A stretch of 63,855 bases of DNA, filler included, from Octopus bimaculoides (Eukaryota): assembly GCF_001194135.2 (NCBI RefSeq). It is 6 parts of 6 records of this genome, joined end to end, with 100 filler letters (N's around TTAATTAATTAA, not from the genome) between each part and the next. Parts side by side here need not be neighbours in the genome. Positions count along the whole stretch, not along the records: positions 2,787 to 33,238 come from NC_068997.1; 5 more parts are not named here. The stretch is one strand, 5' to 3'. The position numbers were made by a program, and so were the translations under genes. Below the pieces are notes generated by a model. The model was not told the origin of the DNA, did not search any database, and saw only the letters and a list, made by a program, of their open reading frames with translations. This document shows positions 9,990 to 22,768 of the stretch, piece by piece. The number at the start of each line of letters is the position of its first letter. The first letter of the stretch is position 1.

Positions 9990-10126
9990 ATGGCGTCAAA
10001 GCGGCAAAAGTTGAAACTTTCAAAACGATCTACGATTTCGGAATGTATTGACTCAAAACTTGACAGCTGTTCGTCTACGAAGGATAAAAGTTTTAATGAT
10101 ACCTCATGTAAGAATGATGGCAACAG
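9990..10126 (+). CDS. FAAP20: FAAP20-like coding exon 1
   Basis: ATG, MASKRQKLKLSKRS..KNDGN, donor AG|GTATAT, phase 2. Confidence 0.7.
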
Positions 10127-10950
10127 GTATATGATTTCCTTCAACTCTTATAAAGTTTTTCATGAAATTAATGCTTTTTAAGTTCGTTTTCTTTTTAACA
10201 AAACAATTCTTTGAAACTGTTGATGACAGCTGCTGGAATGGTTCGCGGTATTTCTTCCTGATTTACGTTTTAAGTTCAAATGCCGCCGAGGTCGACTTTG
10301 CCTTTTATTTATTTTATTTTTCAGCCTTGCCCATTTAGCTGCTACATCTAGCAGGTTGAGCGACCACAAAGGGACTCCCGACATAGTGTTGAGTAAAAGG
10401 CAAGCTCCTACGTTAAAGTCGGTTCTTGTACCGAAAAATACCCAGGAAAATTTTAAACGTTGCACCCTTTCAATTTTCCTTTGTAAATATATTTATAGTT
10501 GTTAATCTCATAACCCTCTTAGATATTTAGAGCCCTACTGAAGATTTGGTCTTCGTAAACTAATTCATGGCAAAAATAGATTTCACTTTCCCGGTCTCAG
10601 AAAACGTTATTGAAACTTTCTTATAAAGGGGAATAACTCTGGAATATCTAAGTTTGTTATGGTCTATAAAAATAATGATTTCCTCCGCTTTACGGTTGTC
10701 TCGGGTTACGGAATTTCCATCAGGGAAATTGTAACGTATGGCTAATAAATTCGAAATATGGTATGTAATTTCACTCTTACGGAAACTTGGACGAAGTTTG
10801 ACAATTTAAAAATTTCTTTTACCTCTTGGTGCTTTAGTTAAGATGAAAGTTTAGCTAACAATGGAAAAAGTATAATGACAATACACATGTTTACACACAA
10901 GTGTCATTTGTGTTTTCTTGGGTCACAATGAGTGTCTATCTCTGTTTATT

Positions 10951-20100: not shown

Positions 20101-22768
20101 AGGAAATAGAAAACAATATAAAATGCATTTCTTTATGGTTTCATATCTGAGCTTAACATAACAAATAGTGTTTCTTACTTGTATTATATGCATTACAAAT
20201 ATATCATAAACCTCCCATTTGTGTGTATACACCAGAATATTAGTTCTGTATATGTGGCTTTAAACATTTTGTTTCCTGATGTGGTGACAGCAGCCCTCAG
20301 TGGACAACTCTAAGCTAAATATGTTTCCTGTCCATCACAACTGTATGTCAAATAAATTTATCTGAATTTATAGAACCATCACAAACAGATGTAGCAACCT
20401 GTGGTTCTCAGCCTTTTAAGTCTATGTGAATGGCATATATATATCTTATTTGTAACATACTAAGGTTTTGTAACATGATTTTTAGGTGTGACTATTAATT
20501 TTAACAATTTCATGTCTTAGTGCTCATGCTACATAAAAAGCACTGGTGATGGTACCATGTAAAAAGTACTGGTGCTGGTGCCATATGAAAAGCACCCAGT
20601 ACACTGTGCAAAGTGGTTGGCATTAGGAAGGGCATCCAGCTGTAGAAACTATGCTGAAACAGAATAGAACCTGGTGCAGCTCCTGGCTTTGCCAGCTCCC
20701 GTCAAACCGTCCAACTCATGCCAACATTATTATATTACAAATGGTGTTTGTTAAATTGATGTTCCCTGATTTATATTAAATATATATCATAAGATCTACT
20801 GCTAGAAAAGGGTAACCCATGCCTGATTTAACCAATAGGAAAGCAAATGTTAATATATTCTAATGATTTAAGGCAGCAAGCTGGCAGACTCATTAGCATG
20901 TCAGGCAAAATGCTTAGCAGCATTTTGTCCATCTTTACATTCTGAGTTCAATTTCTGTTGAAGTCAGCTTTTCCTTTCATCCTTTTGGGGGTTGATAAAA
21001 TGAATACCAATTGAGCCCTGGGGGTCAATGTATATGACTTATCCCTTCCCTCAAACTTGCTGGCCTTGTGCCAAAATTTGAAACCAATATATTTTCATGG
21101 TTTGACAAGCTCTACAGAGTAAATTTCCATTTAGCTGAGTCTGTACCCCCTGTAGTTGTAACTACATCATTTTATTGTTACCCCATAAGAACATGTACAA
21201 TGTACAGTTTCAATTCCTACTTTCTTACAAATTTGGGATCTTGTAATTATATTCTCCTGAAATTTCATGTTAATGTTTTTTAAAAGGTACACCTCACCAA
21301 CACAGTTTAGTTGACATGAAGAAACCAGATTGTATGATTAGTCCTGATCTTTTCACTTGTCAATCACCAGCGGAACAAGAGCCAATTGTCAACAAAGAAA
21401 CTAATGGGAAAGCAGTGGCAAAGACCTTATTTCCTTTGCCTAATGCTCAAAACAGCAGTTCATCAGACAATAACCAACAGAAGAAATCTTCATTCATCAA
21501 ACAATGTCCAATCTGTCAGGAAGTTTTCTTACCTCGGTAAGTATGGATTTATTACAGCATACACAATGTTTAATTTAAATGTACATGACTAATTGAGCAG
21601 AGAAACAGAATTGTGGGTGTTCATCTGGCATGGGTTTGATGGTTTGACTGAGGACTGGCAAGCCAGGAGGCTGCACCAGGCTCCAATCTGATCTGGCAAG
21701 GTTTTACAGCTGGATGCCCTTCCTAATGCCAAGAGTGTAGTGGGTTCTTTTTACATTTCACTGGCATGGGGACCAGTCATGCAGCACTGGCTTCGACTAT
21801 GTTCAGATGGTGCTTTTTACATGCCACCAGCATGGGAGCCAGTTGACACATTCGCATAGTCTTTTTACATGCCACCGGCACGGGGAGCCAGTTAGGCGGC
21901 ACTGGCATTGACCCACGCTCGAATGGTGCTTATTACATGCCACCAGCATGGGTGCCAGTCAGGCGGCACTGGCCAGTTTATATTCAGTTTATATAATTAA
22001 TTAGTTGCAGTAAAGTGTATTTAAAATAACTAATTGAATAAAATTCTTCTCCCTCTTTATCATTTAACAAACTGGACTCCGTTGGTTATGACAATAAGGT
22101 TTCCAGCTGATCCAGTCAATGGATCCAGGTTTCCAGCTGATCCAGCCTGCTTGTGAAATTAATGAACAAGTGGCTGACCACTCTACAGGCACACATACCC
22201 TTAATGTAGTTCTCAAGGAAATTCAGCGTGGTGCAGAATGTGACAAAGCCAGCCCTTTGAATTACAGGTACAGCTCGTATTTGCCAGCTGAGTAATCTGG
22301 GGCAATGTGAAATAAAGTGTCTTGCTCAAGGACACAACATGCTGCCAGGAATCAAACCCATGAACTTACAATCATGAGCTGAATATCCTAACCACTAAGC
22401 CATGTAAATGTATGTTATATATAGACTATTAAAATTGTAACATAGATTTCTATTCTGTATCCAGCTAACTAAATGATCTGTCAGTCAGTGTTTCTAGAAA
22501 TACTGAAAGTATCACAGCAGCTGATTGCCTTTGATGCATACATCAGGAGGATGGACAGACATAGATGAGATATACTGTCAATTATATTAGTAGATAAGAA
22601 GCAATCCAAAATGTTTTATATTGTCAATATCTGTTTCATTTACATTTTACTTCTTGTTTTATCTTGGTATTATTTTTGTTTTCCAGGATGACACTGAAGG
22701 CAAGAAATATACACATAGAATTTTGTCTTGATGCCACAAGTACTGATATCTGGGAAGATGATTCATAA
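9990..22768 (+). CDS. FAAP20: FAAP20-like Fanconi anemia core complex-associated protein, 5 coding exons, 274 aa
   Basis: Exons 137+109+247+250+82 = 825 nt, all GT-AG, phases 2/0/1/2 compatible, no internal stop. Motifs MASKRQKLKLSKR, SKWTPFPE and CPICQEVFLPRMT..HIEFCL..STDIW resemble human FAAP20 as recalled (MEAARRPRLGLSRR, FSWTPFPP, CPMCQKEFAPRLT..HLAQCL..EDVTW). Confidence 0.75.
10240..10310 (+). mobile_element. SINE family B fragment
   Basis: GCGGTATTTC..GTTCAAATGCCGCCGAGGTCGACTTTGCCTTT. Confidence 0.6.
11012..11232. mobile_element. Fold-back element carrying a hammerhead-like core, with 14-bp TSD
   Basis: AAACTAGTTTAATG is repeated at 10998-11011 and 11233-11246. Arms are inverted. 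+ strand reads CGTCT-CTGATGA-TGGAAT..ATCCCA-GAAA-CAGCTGT-A. Confidence 0.7.
11710..12035 (-). mobile_element. Hammerhead-bearing tRNA-SINE (family H), degraded, with duplicated and inverted head
   Basis: Reverse complement of 13310-13562; head repeated at 11880-11952 and 11958-12008, then inverted at 12007-12035. Confidence 0.75.
12566..12795 (+). mobile_element. SINE family B, full length, with 16-bp TSD
   Basis: AGAAATGTTCACATCG at 12550-12565 and 12796-12811; B-box-like GAGTTCAAATTC; A-rich tail. Confidence 0.9.
13299..13562 (+). mobile_element. Hammerhead-bearing tRNA-SINE (family H)
   Basis: B box GTTCGATTCC, (AAT)n, hammerhead core at 13437-13482; the first ~12 nt (TATATGCCCGTGG) are an inverted copy of the head start. 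Confidence 0.8.
13437..13482 (+). ncRNA. Minimal type-I hammerhead ribozyme (predicted)
   Basis: AACAC-CTGATGA-A-GGCTGG(AGTGTATA)TCAGCT-GAAA-CGT-T-GTGTT: stem I is a perfect 5 bp, stem III is the palindrome AACGTT. Confidence 0.65.
15243..15351 (+). CDS. FAAP20: FAAP20-like coding exon 2
   Basis: Acceptor TTTTTCGTTTTTCAG; SFDGRQNDIFKKLRQQLQDLHANVQPLQFSTFPVFK; weak donor AAG|GTCACA; phases 2 and 0 fit both neighbours. Confidence 0.65.
15405..15575 (+). mobile_element. SINE family B (partial)
   Basis: Similarity to 12566-12795. Confidence 0.7.
15750..16050 (+). mobile_element. Degraded SINE pieces (family A head, family E tail)
   Basis: GTGTGGTTAAGATGCTTGC..GGGTTCAGTCC; CCCATGCAAGCATGGAAAAGTGGACATTAAAACGATGATG. 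Confidence 0.5.
16108..16325. mobile_element. piggyBac-type MITE (family 2)
   Basis: Ends CCTTTTAGCATTC / GAATGCTAAAGGG; homologous to 19157-19376. Confidence 0.6.
16905..17065 (-). mobile_element. SINE family A 3' part
   Basis: GACTGCAGCCATGCTGGAGCACC..GTTGTCAAGC. Confidence 0.6.
17160..17379. mobile_element. piggyBac-type MITE (family 1) with TTAA TSD
   Basis: TTAA|CCCTTTCGTTAC ... GTAACAAAAGGG|TTAA. Confidence 0.85.
17857..18060 (-). mobile_element. SINE/LINE-tail family E
   Basis: (CAT)n-TTAACGTCTGTTTTCCATGCTGGCATGGGTTGGAC.. motif, many copies in the window. Confidence 0.7.
18120..18385 (+). mobile_element. SINE family A (degraded)
   Basis: GGTTAAG..CAACCATG..GGGCAAGTGTCTT..GGTAGACAGAAAACTG..(TG)n. 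Confidence 0.6.
18391..18569 (+). mobile_element. Family E copy, near-identical to 20565-20745
   Basis: Direct comparison of the two segments. Confidence 0.75.
18777..19023 (+). CDS. FAAP20: FAAP20-like coding exon 3
   Basis: Long polypyrimidine tract plus GAAG acceptor; VNNIECSHNEALNNYESKWTPFPEF..SNFNP; donor CAG|GTAAAG; phase 1. Confidence 0.8.
19157..19376. mobile_element. piggyBac-type MITE (family 2)
   Basis: CCTTTTAGCATTC ... GAATGTGAAAGGG|TTAA. Confidence 0.6.
20530..20745 (+). mobile_element. Family E copy
   Basis: See 18391-18569. Confidence 0.75.
20872..21085 (+). mobile_element. SINE family B (degraded)
   Basis: Similarity to 12566-12795. Confidence 0.7.
21287..21536 (+). CDS. 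FAAP20: FAAP20-like coding exon 4 (first half of UBZ finger)
   Basis: Acceptor TTTTTTAAAAG; G|GT in frame with MKKPD..CPICQEVFLP; strong donor CG|GTAAGT. Confidence 0.85.
21620..21975 (-). mobile_element. Family E copy with internally repeated subunits
   Basis: GGCATGGGTTTGATGG..CAGCTGGATGCCCTTCCTAATGCC..(ACATGCCACC)x3. Confidence 0.65.
22070..22405 (-). mobile_element. tRNA-SINE family D (core TGTGTCCTTGAGCAAGACACTT)
   Basis: Minus-strand head ATGGCTTAGTGGTTAGG..GGGTTTGATTCC followed by the core motif; other copies at 40015, 40880 and 60935. Confidence 0.8.
22687..22768 (+). CDS. FAAP20: FAAP20-like coding exon 5 (end of UBZ finger, stop)
   Basis: Acceptor TTTTTGTTTTCCAG; (R)MTLKARNIHIEFCLDATSTDIWEDDS*; supplies the His and Cys ligands. 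Confidence 0.85.

What the first reader, a model, noticed from the sequence alone, without database searches (positions are those of the whole stretch)
9990..22768. Invertebrate FAAP20-like gene hidden from the ORF track
Seen: five exons with compatible phases give an 825-nt ORF. Three separate motifs (basic N-terminus, WTPFP, UBZ plus D-x-W tail) appear in the same order as in human FAAP20, which I recalled from memory. Established: FAAP20 binds FANCA and ubiquitin and has mostly been characterised in vertebrates. Inference: molluscs have a FAAP20 orthologue, so this FA core-complex subunit may predate vertebrates.
Basis: partly seen in the sequence, partly recalled or inferred. Interest (0 to 1): 0.72.

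Follow-up and report, generated by a model that had tools for sequence, protein, structure and literature searches.

The report
Unnamed octopus FAAP20 gene, altered zinc finger
This five-exon Octopus bimaculoides gene, listed in RefSeq only as an "uncharacterized protein", is very probably the cephalopod counterpart of FAAP20, a small subunit of the Fanconi anaemia DNA-repair complex, but its ubiquitin-binding zinc finger has lost residues that the human protein needs to bind ubiquitin.

Summary
Five GT-AG exons (9990-10126, 15243-15351, 18777-19023, 21287-21536, 22687-22768, + strand) give an 825-nt ORF of 274 aa. It is identical to RefSeq XP_014772369.1 (LOC106870715, "uncharacterized protein"), so the gene model is not new; the name is. 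The assembly gap lies in intron 1, inside a 2.6-kb stretch absent from the gap-free O. sinensis locus, and hides no exon.

FAAP20 orthology is well supported:
- A cephalopod profile aligns end to end with vertebrate FAAP20 (hhalign probability 97.6%, E about 4e-12).
- The only PDB sequence hits and the top four fold matches are the FAAP20 UBZ.
- Cuttlefish and squid-like orthologues pass Pfam UBZ_FAAP20.
- The region without the UBZ beats 1000 of 1000 shuffles against a vertebrate model.
- The UBZ intron sits at the same codon and phase as in rat.

Caveats:
- The octopus protein itself is below the Pfam threshold, and no cephalopod protein hits FANCA_interact.
- Only cephalopods are shown, not molluscs in general.
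- FANCA in octopus could not be checked.

In Octopus two of the three ubiquitin-essential UBZ positions are replaced (D164N/S, A168E), so ubiquitin binding is probably weakened. This is a new member of a known family, of moderate interest.

The parts
9990..10126 (+). Exon 1 (residues 1-45 plus 2 nt). It encodes the start Met and the basic N-terminal motif MASKRQKLKLSKR, then a low-complexity Ser/Asp/Lys stretch.
   Evidence: M1, L10 and R13 are invariant across cephalopod and vertebrate FAAP20. The vertebrate N-terminal HMM aligns 'aarrprlrLsrRr' to it.
10127..15242 (+). Intron 1 (phase 2). It contains the assembly gap 11270-11626 and a 2.6-kb stretch (10947-13506) that is absent from O. sinensis.
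   Evidence: The flanks are collinear with the gap-free O. sinensis intron.
15243..15351 (+). Exon 2 (residues 46-82). It encodes the predicted amphipathic helix 49-68 (15250-15309), which aligns with the human W40/L44/R45 FANCA-binding helix, followed by the FP motif (F78 P79), which aligns with vertebrate LPAFP. The donor is AAG|gtcaca.
   Evidence: AlphaFold2 predicts helix 49-68 with pLDDT about 75. The donor is conserved in O. sinensis. The following intron is phase 0, as is the rat intron that follows AFPSQ.
18777..19023 (+). Exon 3 (residues 83-165). It carries the WTPFP motif at 18831-18845 (residues 101-105), followed by C-x2-CAT, which is conserved among cephalopods.
   Evidence: W101, P103 and P105 are invariant in all 22 aligned cephalopod and vertebrate sequences. 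The only sequence-assigned FAAP20 stretch in the human FA core complex structure 7KZP is EPTEVFTVGPKTFSWTPFPPDLW.
21287..21536 (+). Exon 4 (residues 165-248). It encodes the disordered linker with the cephalopod-conserved SPDLF and LFP motifs, and the first half of the UBZ (from 21499), with zinc ligands C238 (21505-21507) and C241 (21514-21516). It ends inside the codon of R248 (CG|G).
   Evidence: The rat intron splits the equivalent codon K161 (AA|G), also in phase 2.
22687..22768 (+). Exon 5 (residues 248-274 plus stop). It encodes the UBZ helix with zinc ligands H257 and C261, then D268-I-W270, a 4-residue EDDS extension, and TAA at 22766-22768. The positions equivalent to the human ubiquitin contacts are K252, N255, E259 and D263.
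   Evidence: AlphaFold2 gives pLDDT 81-95 for residues 235-266. Foldseek's top four hits are the FAAP20 UBZ. No alternative canonical UBZ exon exists elsewhere in the piece.

Best explanation
The locus is the Octopus bimaculoides orthologue of FAAP20 (LOC106870715). It encodes a 274-aa protein that is mostly disordered.

The protein keeps the order of parts seen in vertebrate FAAP20:
1. A basic N-terminal motif.
2. A short amphipathic helix.
3. An FP motif.
4. An invariant WTPFP motif.
5. A long linker.
6. A C-terminal zinc finger of the FAAP20 (UBZ2) type.

Inferred mechanism. The N-terminal helix and the WTPFP segment dock onto FANCA and stabilise it within the FANCA-FANCG-FAAP20 module of the Fanconi anaemia core complex, as in vertebrates.

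Inferred departure. In the genus Octopus the zinc finger still folds, because all four zinc ligands and their spacing are kept. Its ubiquitin-contact surface has changed: L161 to K/R, D164 to N/S, A168 to E, A172 to D, and the Trp is no longer C-terminal. Canonical ubiquitin binding is therefore probably weak or lost in Octopus. The cuttlefish and squid-like orthologues keep the canonical surface.

What is shown and what is inferred. Shown: the gene structure, the homology, the intron conservation and the residue substitutions. Inferred: FANCA binding, membership of an octopus FA core complex, and the loss of ubiquitin binding.
For: Gene model.
- The five-exon ORF is identical to the RefSeq model.
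- The same exons and splice sites are present in O. sinensis.
- Overall dN/dS against O. sinensis is 0.41.

Homology.
- The only PDB sequence hits are the human FAAP20 UBZ, 2muq and 3wwq, at E about 0.004.
- A full HMMER scan of 1.84 billion representative proteins finds only cephalopod relatives: O. sinensis, Argonauta and two unnamed RNA-derived proteins.
- One of the unnamed proteins comes from a cuttlefish-like sample.
- These two score 44.7-50.2 bits on Pfam UBZ_FAAP20, against a cut-off of 25.
- After cephalopods, the cephalopod profile's next hits in 5.8 billion proteins are P0131 (PF15751 plus PF15750) and a newt FAAP20.
- hhalign of the cephalopod against the vertebrate profile gives probability 97.6% and E 2.6e-12 on the UBZ. 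With greedy extension the alignment runs 1-274 against 2-183.
- With the UBZ removed, a vertebrate N-terminal HMM scores the octopus proteins at 10.0 and 13.9 bits, with 0 of 1000 shuffles as high. That alignment spans the basic motif, the helix, FP and WTPFP.
- A global MAFFT alignment is collinear. Invariant residues are M1, L10, R13, W101, P103, P105, C238, P239, C241, F245, H257, C261, L262, D268 and W270.

Introns.
- Rat intron phases are 2, 0, 2. Octopus phases are 2, 0, 1, 2.
- The last intron splits the same codon after F-x-P in the UBZ in both species.
- Intron 2 is phase 0 within one codon of the FP motif in both.

Structure.
- AlphaFold2 predicts helix 49-68 and a confident UBZ.
- Foldseek's top four PDB hits are the FAAP20 UBZ, with probability 0.99-1.00.

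Function of the conserved parts in human FAAP20.
- W40/L44/R45 are needed for FANCA binding (PMC6400411).
- The WTPFP stretch is the FAAP20 segment resolved in the FA core complex structure 7KZP.
- D164A, A168L and W180A abolish ubiquitin binding and recruitment to crosslinks (PMC4370504).
Against: - The octopus protein itself is below Pfam's UBZ_FAAP20 threshold (15.4 bits against 25).
- No cephalopod protein hits Pfam FANCA_interact, even at E up to 10.
- The N-terminal similarity is weak in absolute terms: 8-14 bits, and hhalign gives P = 0.005 with probability 7% when the UBZ is removed. It rests largely on short motifs in a disordered, compositionally biased region.
- The human FANCA-binding triad is not conserved. 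W40 is F in Octopus and R in the cuttlefish protein, and L44 and R45 are not kept.
- Intron 1 matches only in phase and relative location, and intron 2 only to within one codon.
- The AlphaFold2 input alignment included vertebrate FAAP20, so the fold match is partly circular.
- Presence of FANCA or FANCG in octopus was not tested.
- No non-cephalopod invertebrate relative was found.
- The dN/dS of 1.27 over the UBZ rests on only 12 substitutions.
Confidence: 0.82

Rival explanations
1. This is a cephalopod-specific disordered protein that shares only a FAAP20-type zinc finger with FAAP20, through domain-level homology or exon shuffling. It is not an orthologue, does not bind FANCA and acts in another ubiquitin-related or nuclear process.
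For: No cephalopod protein hits Pfam FANCA_interact. The hhalign probability for the N-terminal part alone is only 7%. The FANCA-binding triad W40/L44/R45 is not conserved. No relatives were found in other invertebrates to bridge the gap.
Against: - The N-terminal part beats 1000 of 1000 shuffles without the UBZ, and it does so over a collinear set of motifs.
- WTPFP is an exact match at the same relative position, and it is the segment resolved in the human core complex.
- The protein starts with the same M-x-x-(K/R)-R-x-(K/R)-L-x-L-(S/T)-(K/R)-R motif.
- Intron phases 2, 0, 2 recur in the same order.
- Only one such gene per cephalopod species was found.
Confidence: 0.11
2. The gene is a true FAAP20 orthologue that is decaying in the Octopus lineage. 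It is a relic under relaxed selection with little or no remaining function.
For: The UBZ is the most conserved part in vertebrates, yet between two Octopus species it shows dN/dS 1.27 (10 non-synonymous and 2 synonymous differences). It has also lost two ubiquitin-essential residues. The position equivalent to D164 differs even between the two species (N against S).
Against: - The ORF is intact in O. bimaculoides, O. sinensis and O. vulgaris.
- All splice sites are conserved.
- Overall dN/dS is 0.41, and it is 0.11-0.13 over residues 17-48 and the WTPFP block.
- The zinc ligands and their spacing are kept.
Confidence: 0.05
3. The ORF is a chance or mis-joined reading frame, for example across the assembly gap, and not a real gene.
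For: No octopus transcript contig was available in the collection. There is a gap in intron 1.
Against: - The model is identical to RefSeq models from two annotation rounds.
- The same five exons are present in a gap-free assembly of another species.
- Spliced mRNA-derived orthologues exist in cuttlefish-like samples.
- The gap is intronic.
Confidence: 0.01

Closest known systems
Vertebrate FAAP20 (human C1orf86 / FAAP20; Pfam FANCA_interact PF15751 plus UBZ_FAAP20 PF15750)
   Same: - The order of parts is the same: basic N-terminus, helix, (L)P-x-FP, WTPFP, linker, and a C-terminal C-x2-C-x15-H-x3-C zinc finger followed by D-x-(x)-W.
- The intron that splits the codon after F-x-P in the zinc finger is at the same place and phase.
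- The predicted fold of the zinc finger is the same: a loop plus a single helix, without the beta-beta hairpin.
   Different: - It is about 90 residues longer (274 against 180 aa), because of low-complexity insertions after the N-terminal motif and in the linker.
- It has one extra intron.
- It gives no Pfam FANCA_interact hit.
- The W40/L44/R45 triad is not conserved.
- In Octopus the ubiquitin contacts L161, D164, A168 and A172 are replaced by K/R, N/S, E and D.
- In Octopus the Trp is followed by EDDS instead of ending the protein.
Cuttlefish and squid-like orthologues P0126 and P0123 (unnamed RNA-assembly proteins)
   Same: They align over the full length with 27-29% identity. They share MA(S/A)KRQ+LKL, WTPFP-x2-C-x2-CAT, SPDLF, LFP and the UBZ. 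An unspliced isoform (P0125) suggests an intron at the same place in the UBZ.
   Different: They keep the canonical ubiquitin contacts (L, D, A and a C-terminal W) and pass Pfam UBZ_FAAP20 at 45-50 bits. The Octopus proteins score 15-18 bits.
Other ubiquitin-binding zinc fingers (TAX1BP1 UBZ2; Pfam Zn-C2H2_12)
   Same: They are small CCHC/CCHH zinc fingers with one helix. They are secondary hits: Foldseek probability about 0.47, and Pfam 18-25 bits.
   Different: They always score below FAAP20. They lack the WTPFP and N-terminal motifs and the C-terminal Trp tail.
RefSeq LOC106870715 (XP_014772369.1, XP_052830062.1), LOC115220748 in O. sinensis, and CAI9735001.1 in O. vulgaris
   Same: These are the same gene. 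The O. bimaculoides records are 100% identical to the model built here.
   Different: All of them are named 'uncharacterized' or 'hypothetical' protein, with no FAAP20 or UBZ annotation.

Membership tests
FAAP20 | C-terminal FAAP20-type (UBZ2) zinc finger: C-x2-C-x15-H-x3-C, loop plus a single helix, at the end of the protein | tested here: met
   - The ligands C238, C241, H257 and C261 have the same spacing as human C147, C150, H166 and C170.
- hhalign gives probability 97.6%, E 2.6e-12.
- The only PDB sequence hits are the FAAP20 UBZ.
- Foldseek's top four hits are the FAAP20 UBZ.
- The direct Pfam PF15750 score of the octopus protein is below threshold (15.4 bits against 25).
- Its cuttlefish and squid-like orthologues pass with 44.7-50.2 bits.
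FAAP20 | N-terminal FANCA-interacting region (Pfam FANCA_interact PF15751), including the WTPFP segment | tested here: inconclusive
   - No cephalopod protein hits PF15751 at E up to 10.
- An HMM built here from the N-terminal part of 20 vertebrate FAAP20s scores 10.0 and 13.9 bits on the two Octopus proteins, with 0 of 1000 shuffles as high. It scores 7.8 and 9.7 bits on the decapod-like proteins (1 of 1000 each).
- That alignment is collinear over the basic motif, the helix, FP and WTPFP.
- W-x-P-x-P is invariant in all 22 aligned sequences.
- hhalign on the N-terminal part alone gives P = 0.005 and probability 7%.
FAAP20 | Shared gene structure with vertebrate FAAP20 (evidence of descent) | tested here: met
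   - Rat coding exons are 62, 145, 275 and 73 nt, with intron phases 2, 0, 2.
- Octopus phases are 2, 0, 1, 2.
- The last intron splits the codon of the basic residue after F-x-P in both species (AA|G in rat, CG|G in octopus).
- Intron 2 is phase 0 within one codon of the FP motif.
- Intron 1 has the same phase, but its position cannot be aligned.
- Octopus has one extra intron, in the linker.
FAAP20 | Reciprocal best match: FAAP20 is the best non-cephalopod hit, and FAAP20 models recognise the cephalopod proteins | tested here: met
   Forward: after cephalopods, the hits are P0131 (PF15751 plus PF15750, E 0.028) and newt FAAP20 (E 0.13) in a database of 5.8 billion proteins. Reverse: Pfam UBZ_FAAP20 recognises P0123, P0124 and P0126 above threshold, and it outscores every other family. 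The E-values of the forward hits are marginal at that database size.
FAAP20 | Canonical ubiquitin-contact residues of the UBZ (human L161, D164, A168, A172, D177, C-terminal W180). This is a functional signature, not a criterion of descent. | tested here: not met
   - Octopus has K252 (R in O. sinensis), N255 (S), E259 and D263. D268 is kept. W270 is kept, but it is shifted by one residue and followed by EDDS.
- In human FAAP20, D164A, A168L and W180A abolish binding (PMC4370504).
- The cuttlefish and squid-like orthologues keep L, D, A and the terminal W.
- For this reason ubiquitin binding is not claimed for the Octopus protein.
FAAP20 | Partner FANCA (and FANCG) encoded in the same genome | not testable with these tools
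FAAP20 | Physical binding to FANCA and stabilisation of it | not testable with these tools
   This needs co-IP or pull-down, or a multimer structure prediction. Only single-chain prediction was available.

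The most novel reading that the evidence does not exclude
FAAP20, and with it the FANCA-FANCG-FAAP20 module, dates back at least to the last common ancestor of protostomes and deuterostomes and has been overlooked outside vertebrates because it evolves fast. Within cephalopods, the Octopus lineage has kept the FANCA-docking part but given up canonical ubiquitin recognition by the UBZ. That would be a natural separation-of-function variant, implying that recruitment of the core complex through ubiquitin is dispensable or rewired there.
Probability: 0.4. Interest if true: 0.5.

Novelty: new member of a known kind. Interest (0 to 1): 0.36.

Why it matters
FAAP20 has been studied only in vertebrates. 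Reviews describe FA core-complex genes as largely missing from 'lower' eukaryotes (PMC4657327). More recent work pushed FANCC, FANCE and FANCF back to cnidarians, tunicates and plants by deep profile searches (PMC10085685).

A cephalopod FAAP20 extends the same trend to the FANCA-FANCG-FAAP20 module. It also gives names to several 'uncharacterized' RefSeq genes.

The Octopus-specific loss of ubiquitin-contact residues, set against a canonical UBZ in cuttlefish and squid-like relatives, offers a ready-made natural comparison. It could be used to ask what the FAAP20 UBZ is for. This is an incremental annotation and evolution result, not a new mechanism.

Tried and rejected
1. Pfam on the octopus protein gave only a sub-threshold UBZ_FAAP20 hit and no FANCA_interact hit. 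This is insufficient on its own.
2. A search with human FAAP20, recalled from memory, listed only mammals, so it said nothing about invertebrates. Residues 73-95 and 139-180 of the recalled sequence match PDB chains 7kzp_W and 2muq; the rest was not checked.
3. A full HMMER scan with the two-Octopus profile found only four proteins, all cephalopod. With so shallow a profile this is not evidence that other molluscs lack the gene.
4. Six literature searches on FAAP20 or FANCA in invertebrates, molluscs, octopus or Ciona found no report of a non-vertebrate FAAP20 and nothing on octopus FANCA. A separate search for the SRA run numbers found nothing.
The O. sinensis locus was used instead.
6. Synteny with the metaxin gene that overlaps the cuttlefish orthologue was looked for. 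There is no MTX hit in the window or within 10 kb of the O. sinensis gene.
7. A search for an alternative, canonical UBZ exon elsewhere in the piece found none.
8. Rfam found nothing in the piece. Pfam found nothing in four long stray ORFs.
9. The 'inverted repeats' I1-I5 are runs of N pairing with runs of N. They are artefacts.

Full report
WHAT IS THERE. The piece (2787-33238) is AT-rich (36% G+C) and has seven assembly gaps. It matches Octopus bimaculoides assembly GCA_001194135.2, chromosome record CM046617.1, at all 29,982 positions compared, and that record has the same gaps.

All have GT..AG borders, they sum to 825 nt, and they encode 274 aa plus TAA. The product is 100% identical to XP_014772369.1 / XP_052830062.1, 'uncharacterized protein LOC106870715'. 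The model is therefore already in RefSeq. What is missing is a name.

THE GAP. The gap at 11270-11626 lies inside intron 1 (10127-15242), so its unknown length cannot change the frame. I compared the window with the gap-free O. sinensis locus (L010, no N).
- Window 9924-10947 and window 13506-15395 are collinear with one continuous O. sinensis intron.
- The 2.6 kb between them, which holds the gap and repeat copies, corresponds to only about 30 bp there.
- O. sinensis has the same five exons and the same splice sites, including the unusual exon-2 donor AAG|gtcaca.
- Its 276-aa protein is collinear with the octopus model across every junction.

No exon is hidden in the gap. No octopus transcript contig was in the collection, so junction reads were not seen directly. 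Spliced mRNA-derived orthologues do exist in other cephalopods.

DIRECT DATABASE TESTS. Pfam gives the octopus protein only a sub-threshold UBZ_FAAP20 hit (15.4 bits, cut-off 25) and no FANCA_interact hit. Against all PDB sequences the only two hits are the human FAAP20 UBZ (2muq and 3wwq, E about 0.004).

A word-indexed search of 5.8 billion proteins found only the O. sinensis orthologue, at 88% identity. A full HMMER scan of 1.84 billion representative proteins with the two-Octopus profile found four proteins:
- O. sinensis.
- A partial Argonauta hians protein (1.5e-33).
- Two unnamed RNA-assembly proteins, P0123 (2.9e-13, full length) and P0124 (9.6e-11), whose complete form is P0126.

P0124 and P0126 come from a cuttlefish-like organism. 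A metaxin co-assembled with them falls in the 90%-identity cluster of MTX of Acanthosepion (Sepia) pharaonis. P0123 is 47% identical to P0126; its taxon is undetermined.

THE LINK TO FAAP20. P0123, P0124 and P0126 pass Pfam UBZ_FAAP20 with 44.7-50.2 bits, well above any other family.

A five-sequence cephalopod profile, searched again in the 5.8-billion database, finds as its first non-cephalopod hits P0131 (which carries both FAAP20 Pfam domains, E 0.028) and 'Fanconi anemia core complex-associated protein 20 isoform X2' of a newt (E 0.13).

Profile-profile comparison with 20 vertebrate FAAP20s gives probability 97.6% and E 2.6e-12 over the UBZ. With greedy extension the alignment runs from residue 1 to 274 against 2-183 of 184. 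It pairs the N-terminal basic motif, FSTFP with LPAFP, WTPFP with WTPFP, and the UBZ.

To ask whether anything beyond the zinc finger is shared, I removed the UBZ from both sides.
- hhalign then gives a collinear 100-column alignment with P = 0.005 but a probability of only 7%.
- An HMM of the vertebrate N-terminal part scores the two Octopus proteins at 10.0 and 13.9 bits, with 0 of 1000 composition-preserving shuffles reaching that.
- The two decapod-like proteins score 7.8 and 9.7 bits (1 of 1000 each), and the Argonauta fragment 2.7 bits (34 of 1000).
- The alignment covers 'aarrprlrLsrRr', the helix, FP and WTPFP.

A plain MAFFT alignment of 22 sequences is collinear. Its invariant residues are M1, L10, R13, W101, P103, P105, C238, P239, C241, F245, H257, C261, L262, D268 and W270.

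INDEPENDENT EVIDENCE FROM GENE STRUCTURE. I rebuilt the rat Faap20 gene from its genomic locus. It has coding exons of 62, 145, 275 and 73 nt and intron phases 2, 0, 2. Octopus has phases 2, 0, 1, 2.
- The last intron splits, after its second base, the codon of the basic residue that follows F-x-P in the zinc finger: FDPK AA|G in rat and FLPR CG|G in octopus. Place and phase are the same.
- Intron 2 is phase 0 in both and lies within one codon of the FP motif (AFPSQ|E against TFPVFK|V).
- Intron 1 has the same phase and lies between the basic motif and the helix in both, but that region cannot be aligned.
- The third octopus intron (phase 1) is extra and sits in the linker.
- A 101-aa cuttlefish isoform (P0125) matches the full-length protein P0126 (MPQLDID...) up to '...FPTQ' and then ends 'YVKF', as expected for read-through of an intron at the same UBZ position. 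This last point is an inference.

STRUCTURE. AlphaFold2 predicts a largely disordered protein with two ordered elements: helix 49-68 (pLDDT about 75) and the UBZ at 235-266 (pLDDT 81-95), with a single helix 251-266. The input alignment included vertebrate FAAP20, so this is partly circular.

Foldseek against the PDB ranks four FAAP20 UBZ chains first (probability 0.99-1.00, TM to target 0.66-0.76, rmsd 1.0 A over 32 columns). TAX1BP1 UBZ follows at probability about 0.47. E-values are poor (0.2-0.3) because the domain is tiny.

HOW IT PROBABLY WORKS. In human FAAP20 the N-terminal region binds and stabilises FANCA, and W40A/L44Q/R45A abolishes this (PMC6400411). The only FAAP20 stretch with assigned sequence in the human FA core complex structures (7KZP and related entries) is EPTEVFTVGPKTFSWTPFPPDLW.

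The cephalopod proteins keep a helix at the corresponding place and an exact WTPFP. I therefore infer that they dock on FANCA in the same way. The W40/L44/R45 triad itself is not conserved: W40 is F in Octopus, W in P0123 and R in P0126. This step is an inference and is not shown.

AN OCTOPUS-SPECIFIC TWIST. In the human UBZ the ubiquitin contacts are L161, D164, L167, A168, L171, A172, D177 and the C-terminal W180. D164A, A168L and W180A abolish binding and recruitment to crosslinks. L161A, A172L and D177A weaken binding 6- to 11-fold (PMC4370504).

The cuttlefish and squid-like proteins keep L, D, A and a C-terminal W. The Octopus proteins have K/R at 161, N/S at 164, E at 168 and D at 172, and their Trp is followed by EDDS. 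This explains their sub-threshold Pfam scores.

Between O. bimaculoides and O. sinensis, dN/dS is 0.41 overall. It is 1.27 over residues 233-274 (10 non-synonymous and 2 synonymous differences), against 0.11-0.13 over residues 17-48 and the WTPFP block. The counts are small, so this is only suggestive.

No alternative canonical UBZ exon exists in the piece. I infer that canonical ubiquitin binding is weakened or lost in Octopus, while the zinc-finger fold (all four ligands and their spacing) is kept.

COMPARISON WITH WHAT IS KNOWN. The protein is filed as a divergent member (orthologue) of the FAAP20 family. The grounds are collinear architecture, reciprocal profile matches through intermediates, and shared intron positions. 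It is not claimed to work like FAAP20 in ubiquitin binding.

In the paper library no article reports FAAP20 outside vertebrates. The octopus, O. sinensis, O. vulgaris and Argonauta records are all 'uncharacterized' or 'hypothetical'.

No non-cephalopod invertebrate relative was found, but the profile was too shallow for that absence to mean much.

VERDICT. This is a new member of a known family, with a lineage-specific degenerate UBZ, and of moderate interest.

Noticed in passing
L001-L005 and L011 (cuttlefish-like RNA assemblies); L001 4058-4073: In five independent runs the FAAP20-like ORF is joined to an antisense metaxin (MTX) mRNA. Comparison with the clean mRNA L011 shows that MTX exon 1 (...ATGCAATCTTCGTCGG, followed on that strand by a GTAAGT donor) lies antisense inside FAAP20-like exon 1. 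The two genes therefore overlap head to head in cuttlefish. The 229-aa ORF P0124 is an artefact of the merged contigs. No MTX was found in the window or within 10 kb of the O. sinensis gene.
   Followed up: partly
window 9311-9488 and 9630-9807: An inverted repeat with 178-nt arms that are 96% complementary, separated by 141 nt. It ends 183 nt upstream of the start codon at 9990. It looks like a MITE-like or palindromic element in the likely promoter or 5'UTR region.
   Followed up: no
window 6670-6768, 12565-12728, 15395-15559, 20872-21023; inverted 28304-28401, 29815-29987: A short interspersed repeat family of about 100-150 nt with 64-81% identity between copies, scattered through the introns and flanks. 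One copy begins 44 nt after the exon-2 donor.
   Followed up: no
window 17867-18045, 20561-20727 (inverted), 24319-24507, 26249-26384: A second dispersed repeat family (72-83% identity). It produces the recurring stray ORFs such as '...MPTTLHSVLGAFH.APAPV...'.
   Followed up: no
window 10947-13506: A 2.6-kb stretch of intron 1 with no counterpart in O. sinensis. It is an insertion in O. bimaculoides or a deletion in O. sinensis. It contains the assembly gap and a repeat copy.
   Followed up: partly
window 7159-7179, 11627-11720, 24560-24609, 27200-27290: Three of the assembly gaps (7180-7571, 11270-11626, 24610-24619) are bordered on one side by (TA)n/(TG)n microsatellite, which probably caused them. 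A similar microsatellite tract lies at 27200-27290. The 99%-complementary 'inverted repeats' I1-I5 are merely N runs pairing with N runs.
   Followed up: no
window 3347-3706 (-), 4358-4660 (+), 31654-32013 (-): Stray ORFs of 100-119 aa that look like fragments of mobile-element proteins by eye. None has a Pfam hit at E up to 0.01.
   Followed up: partly
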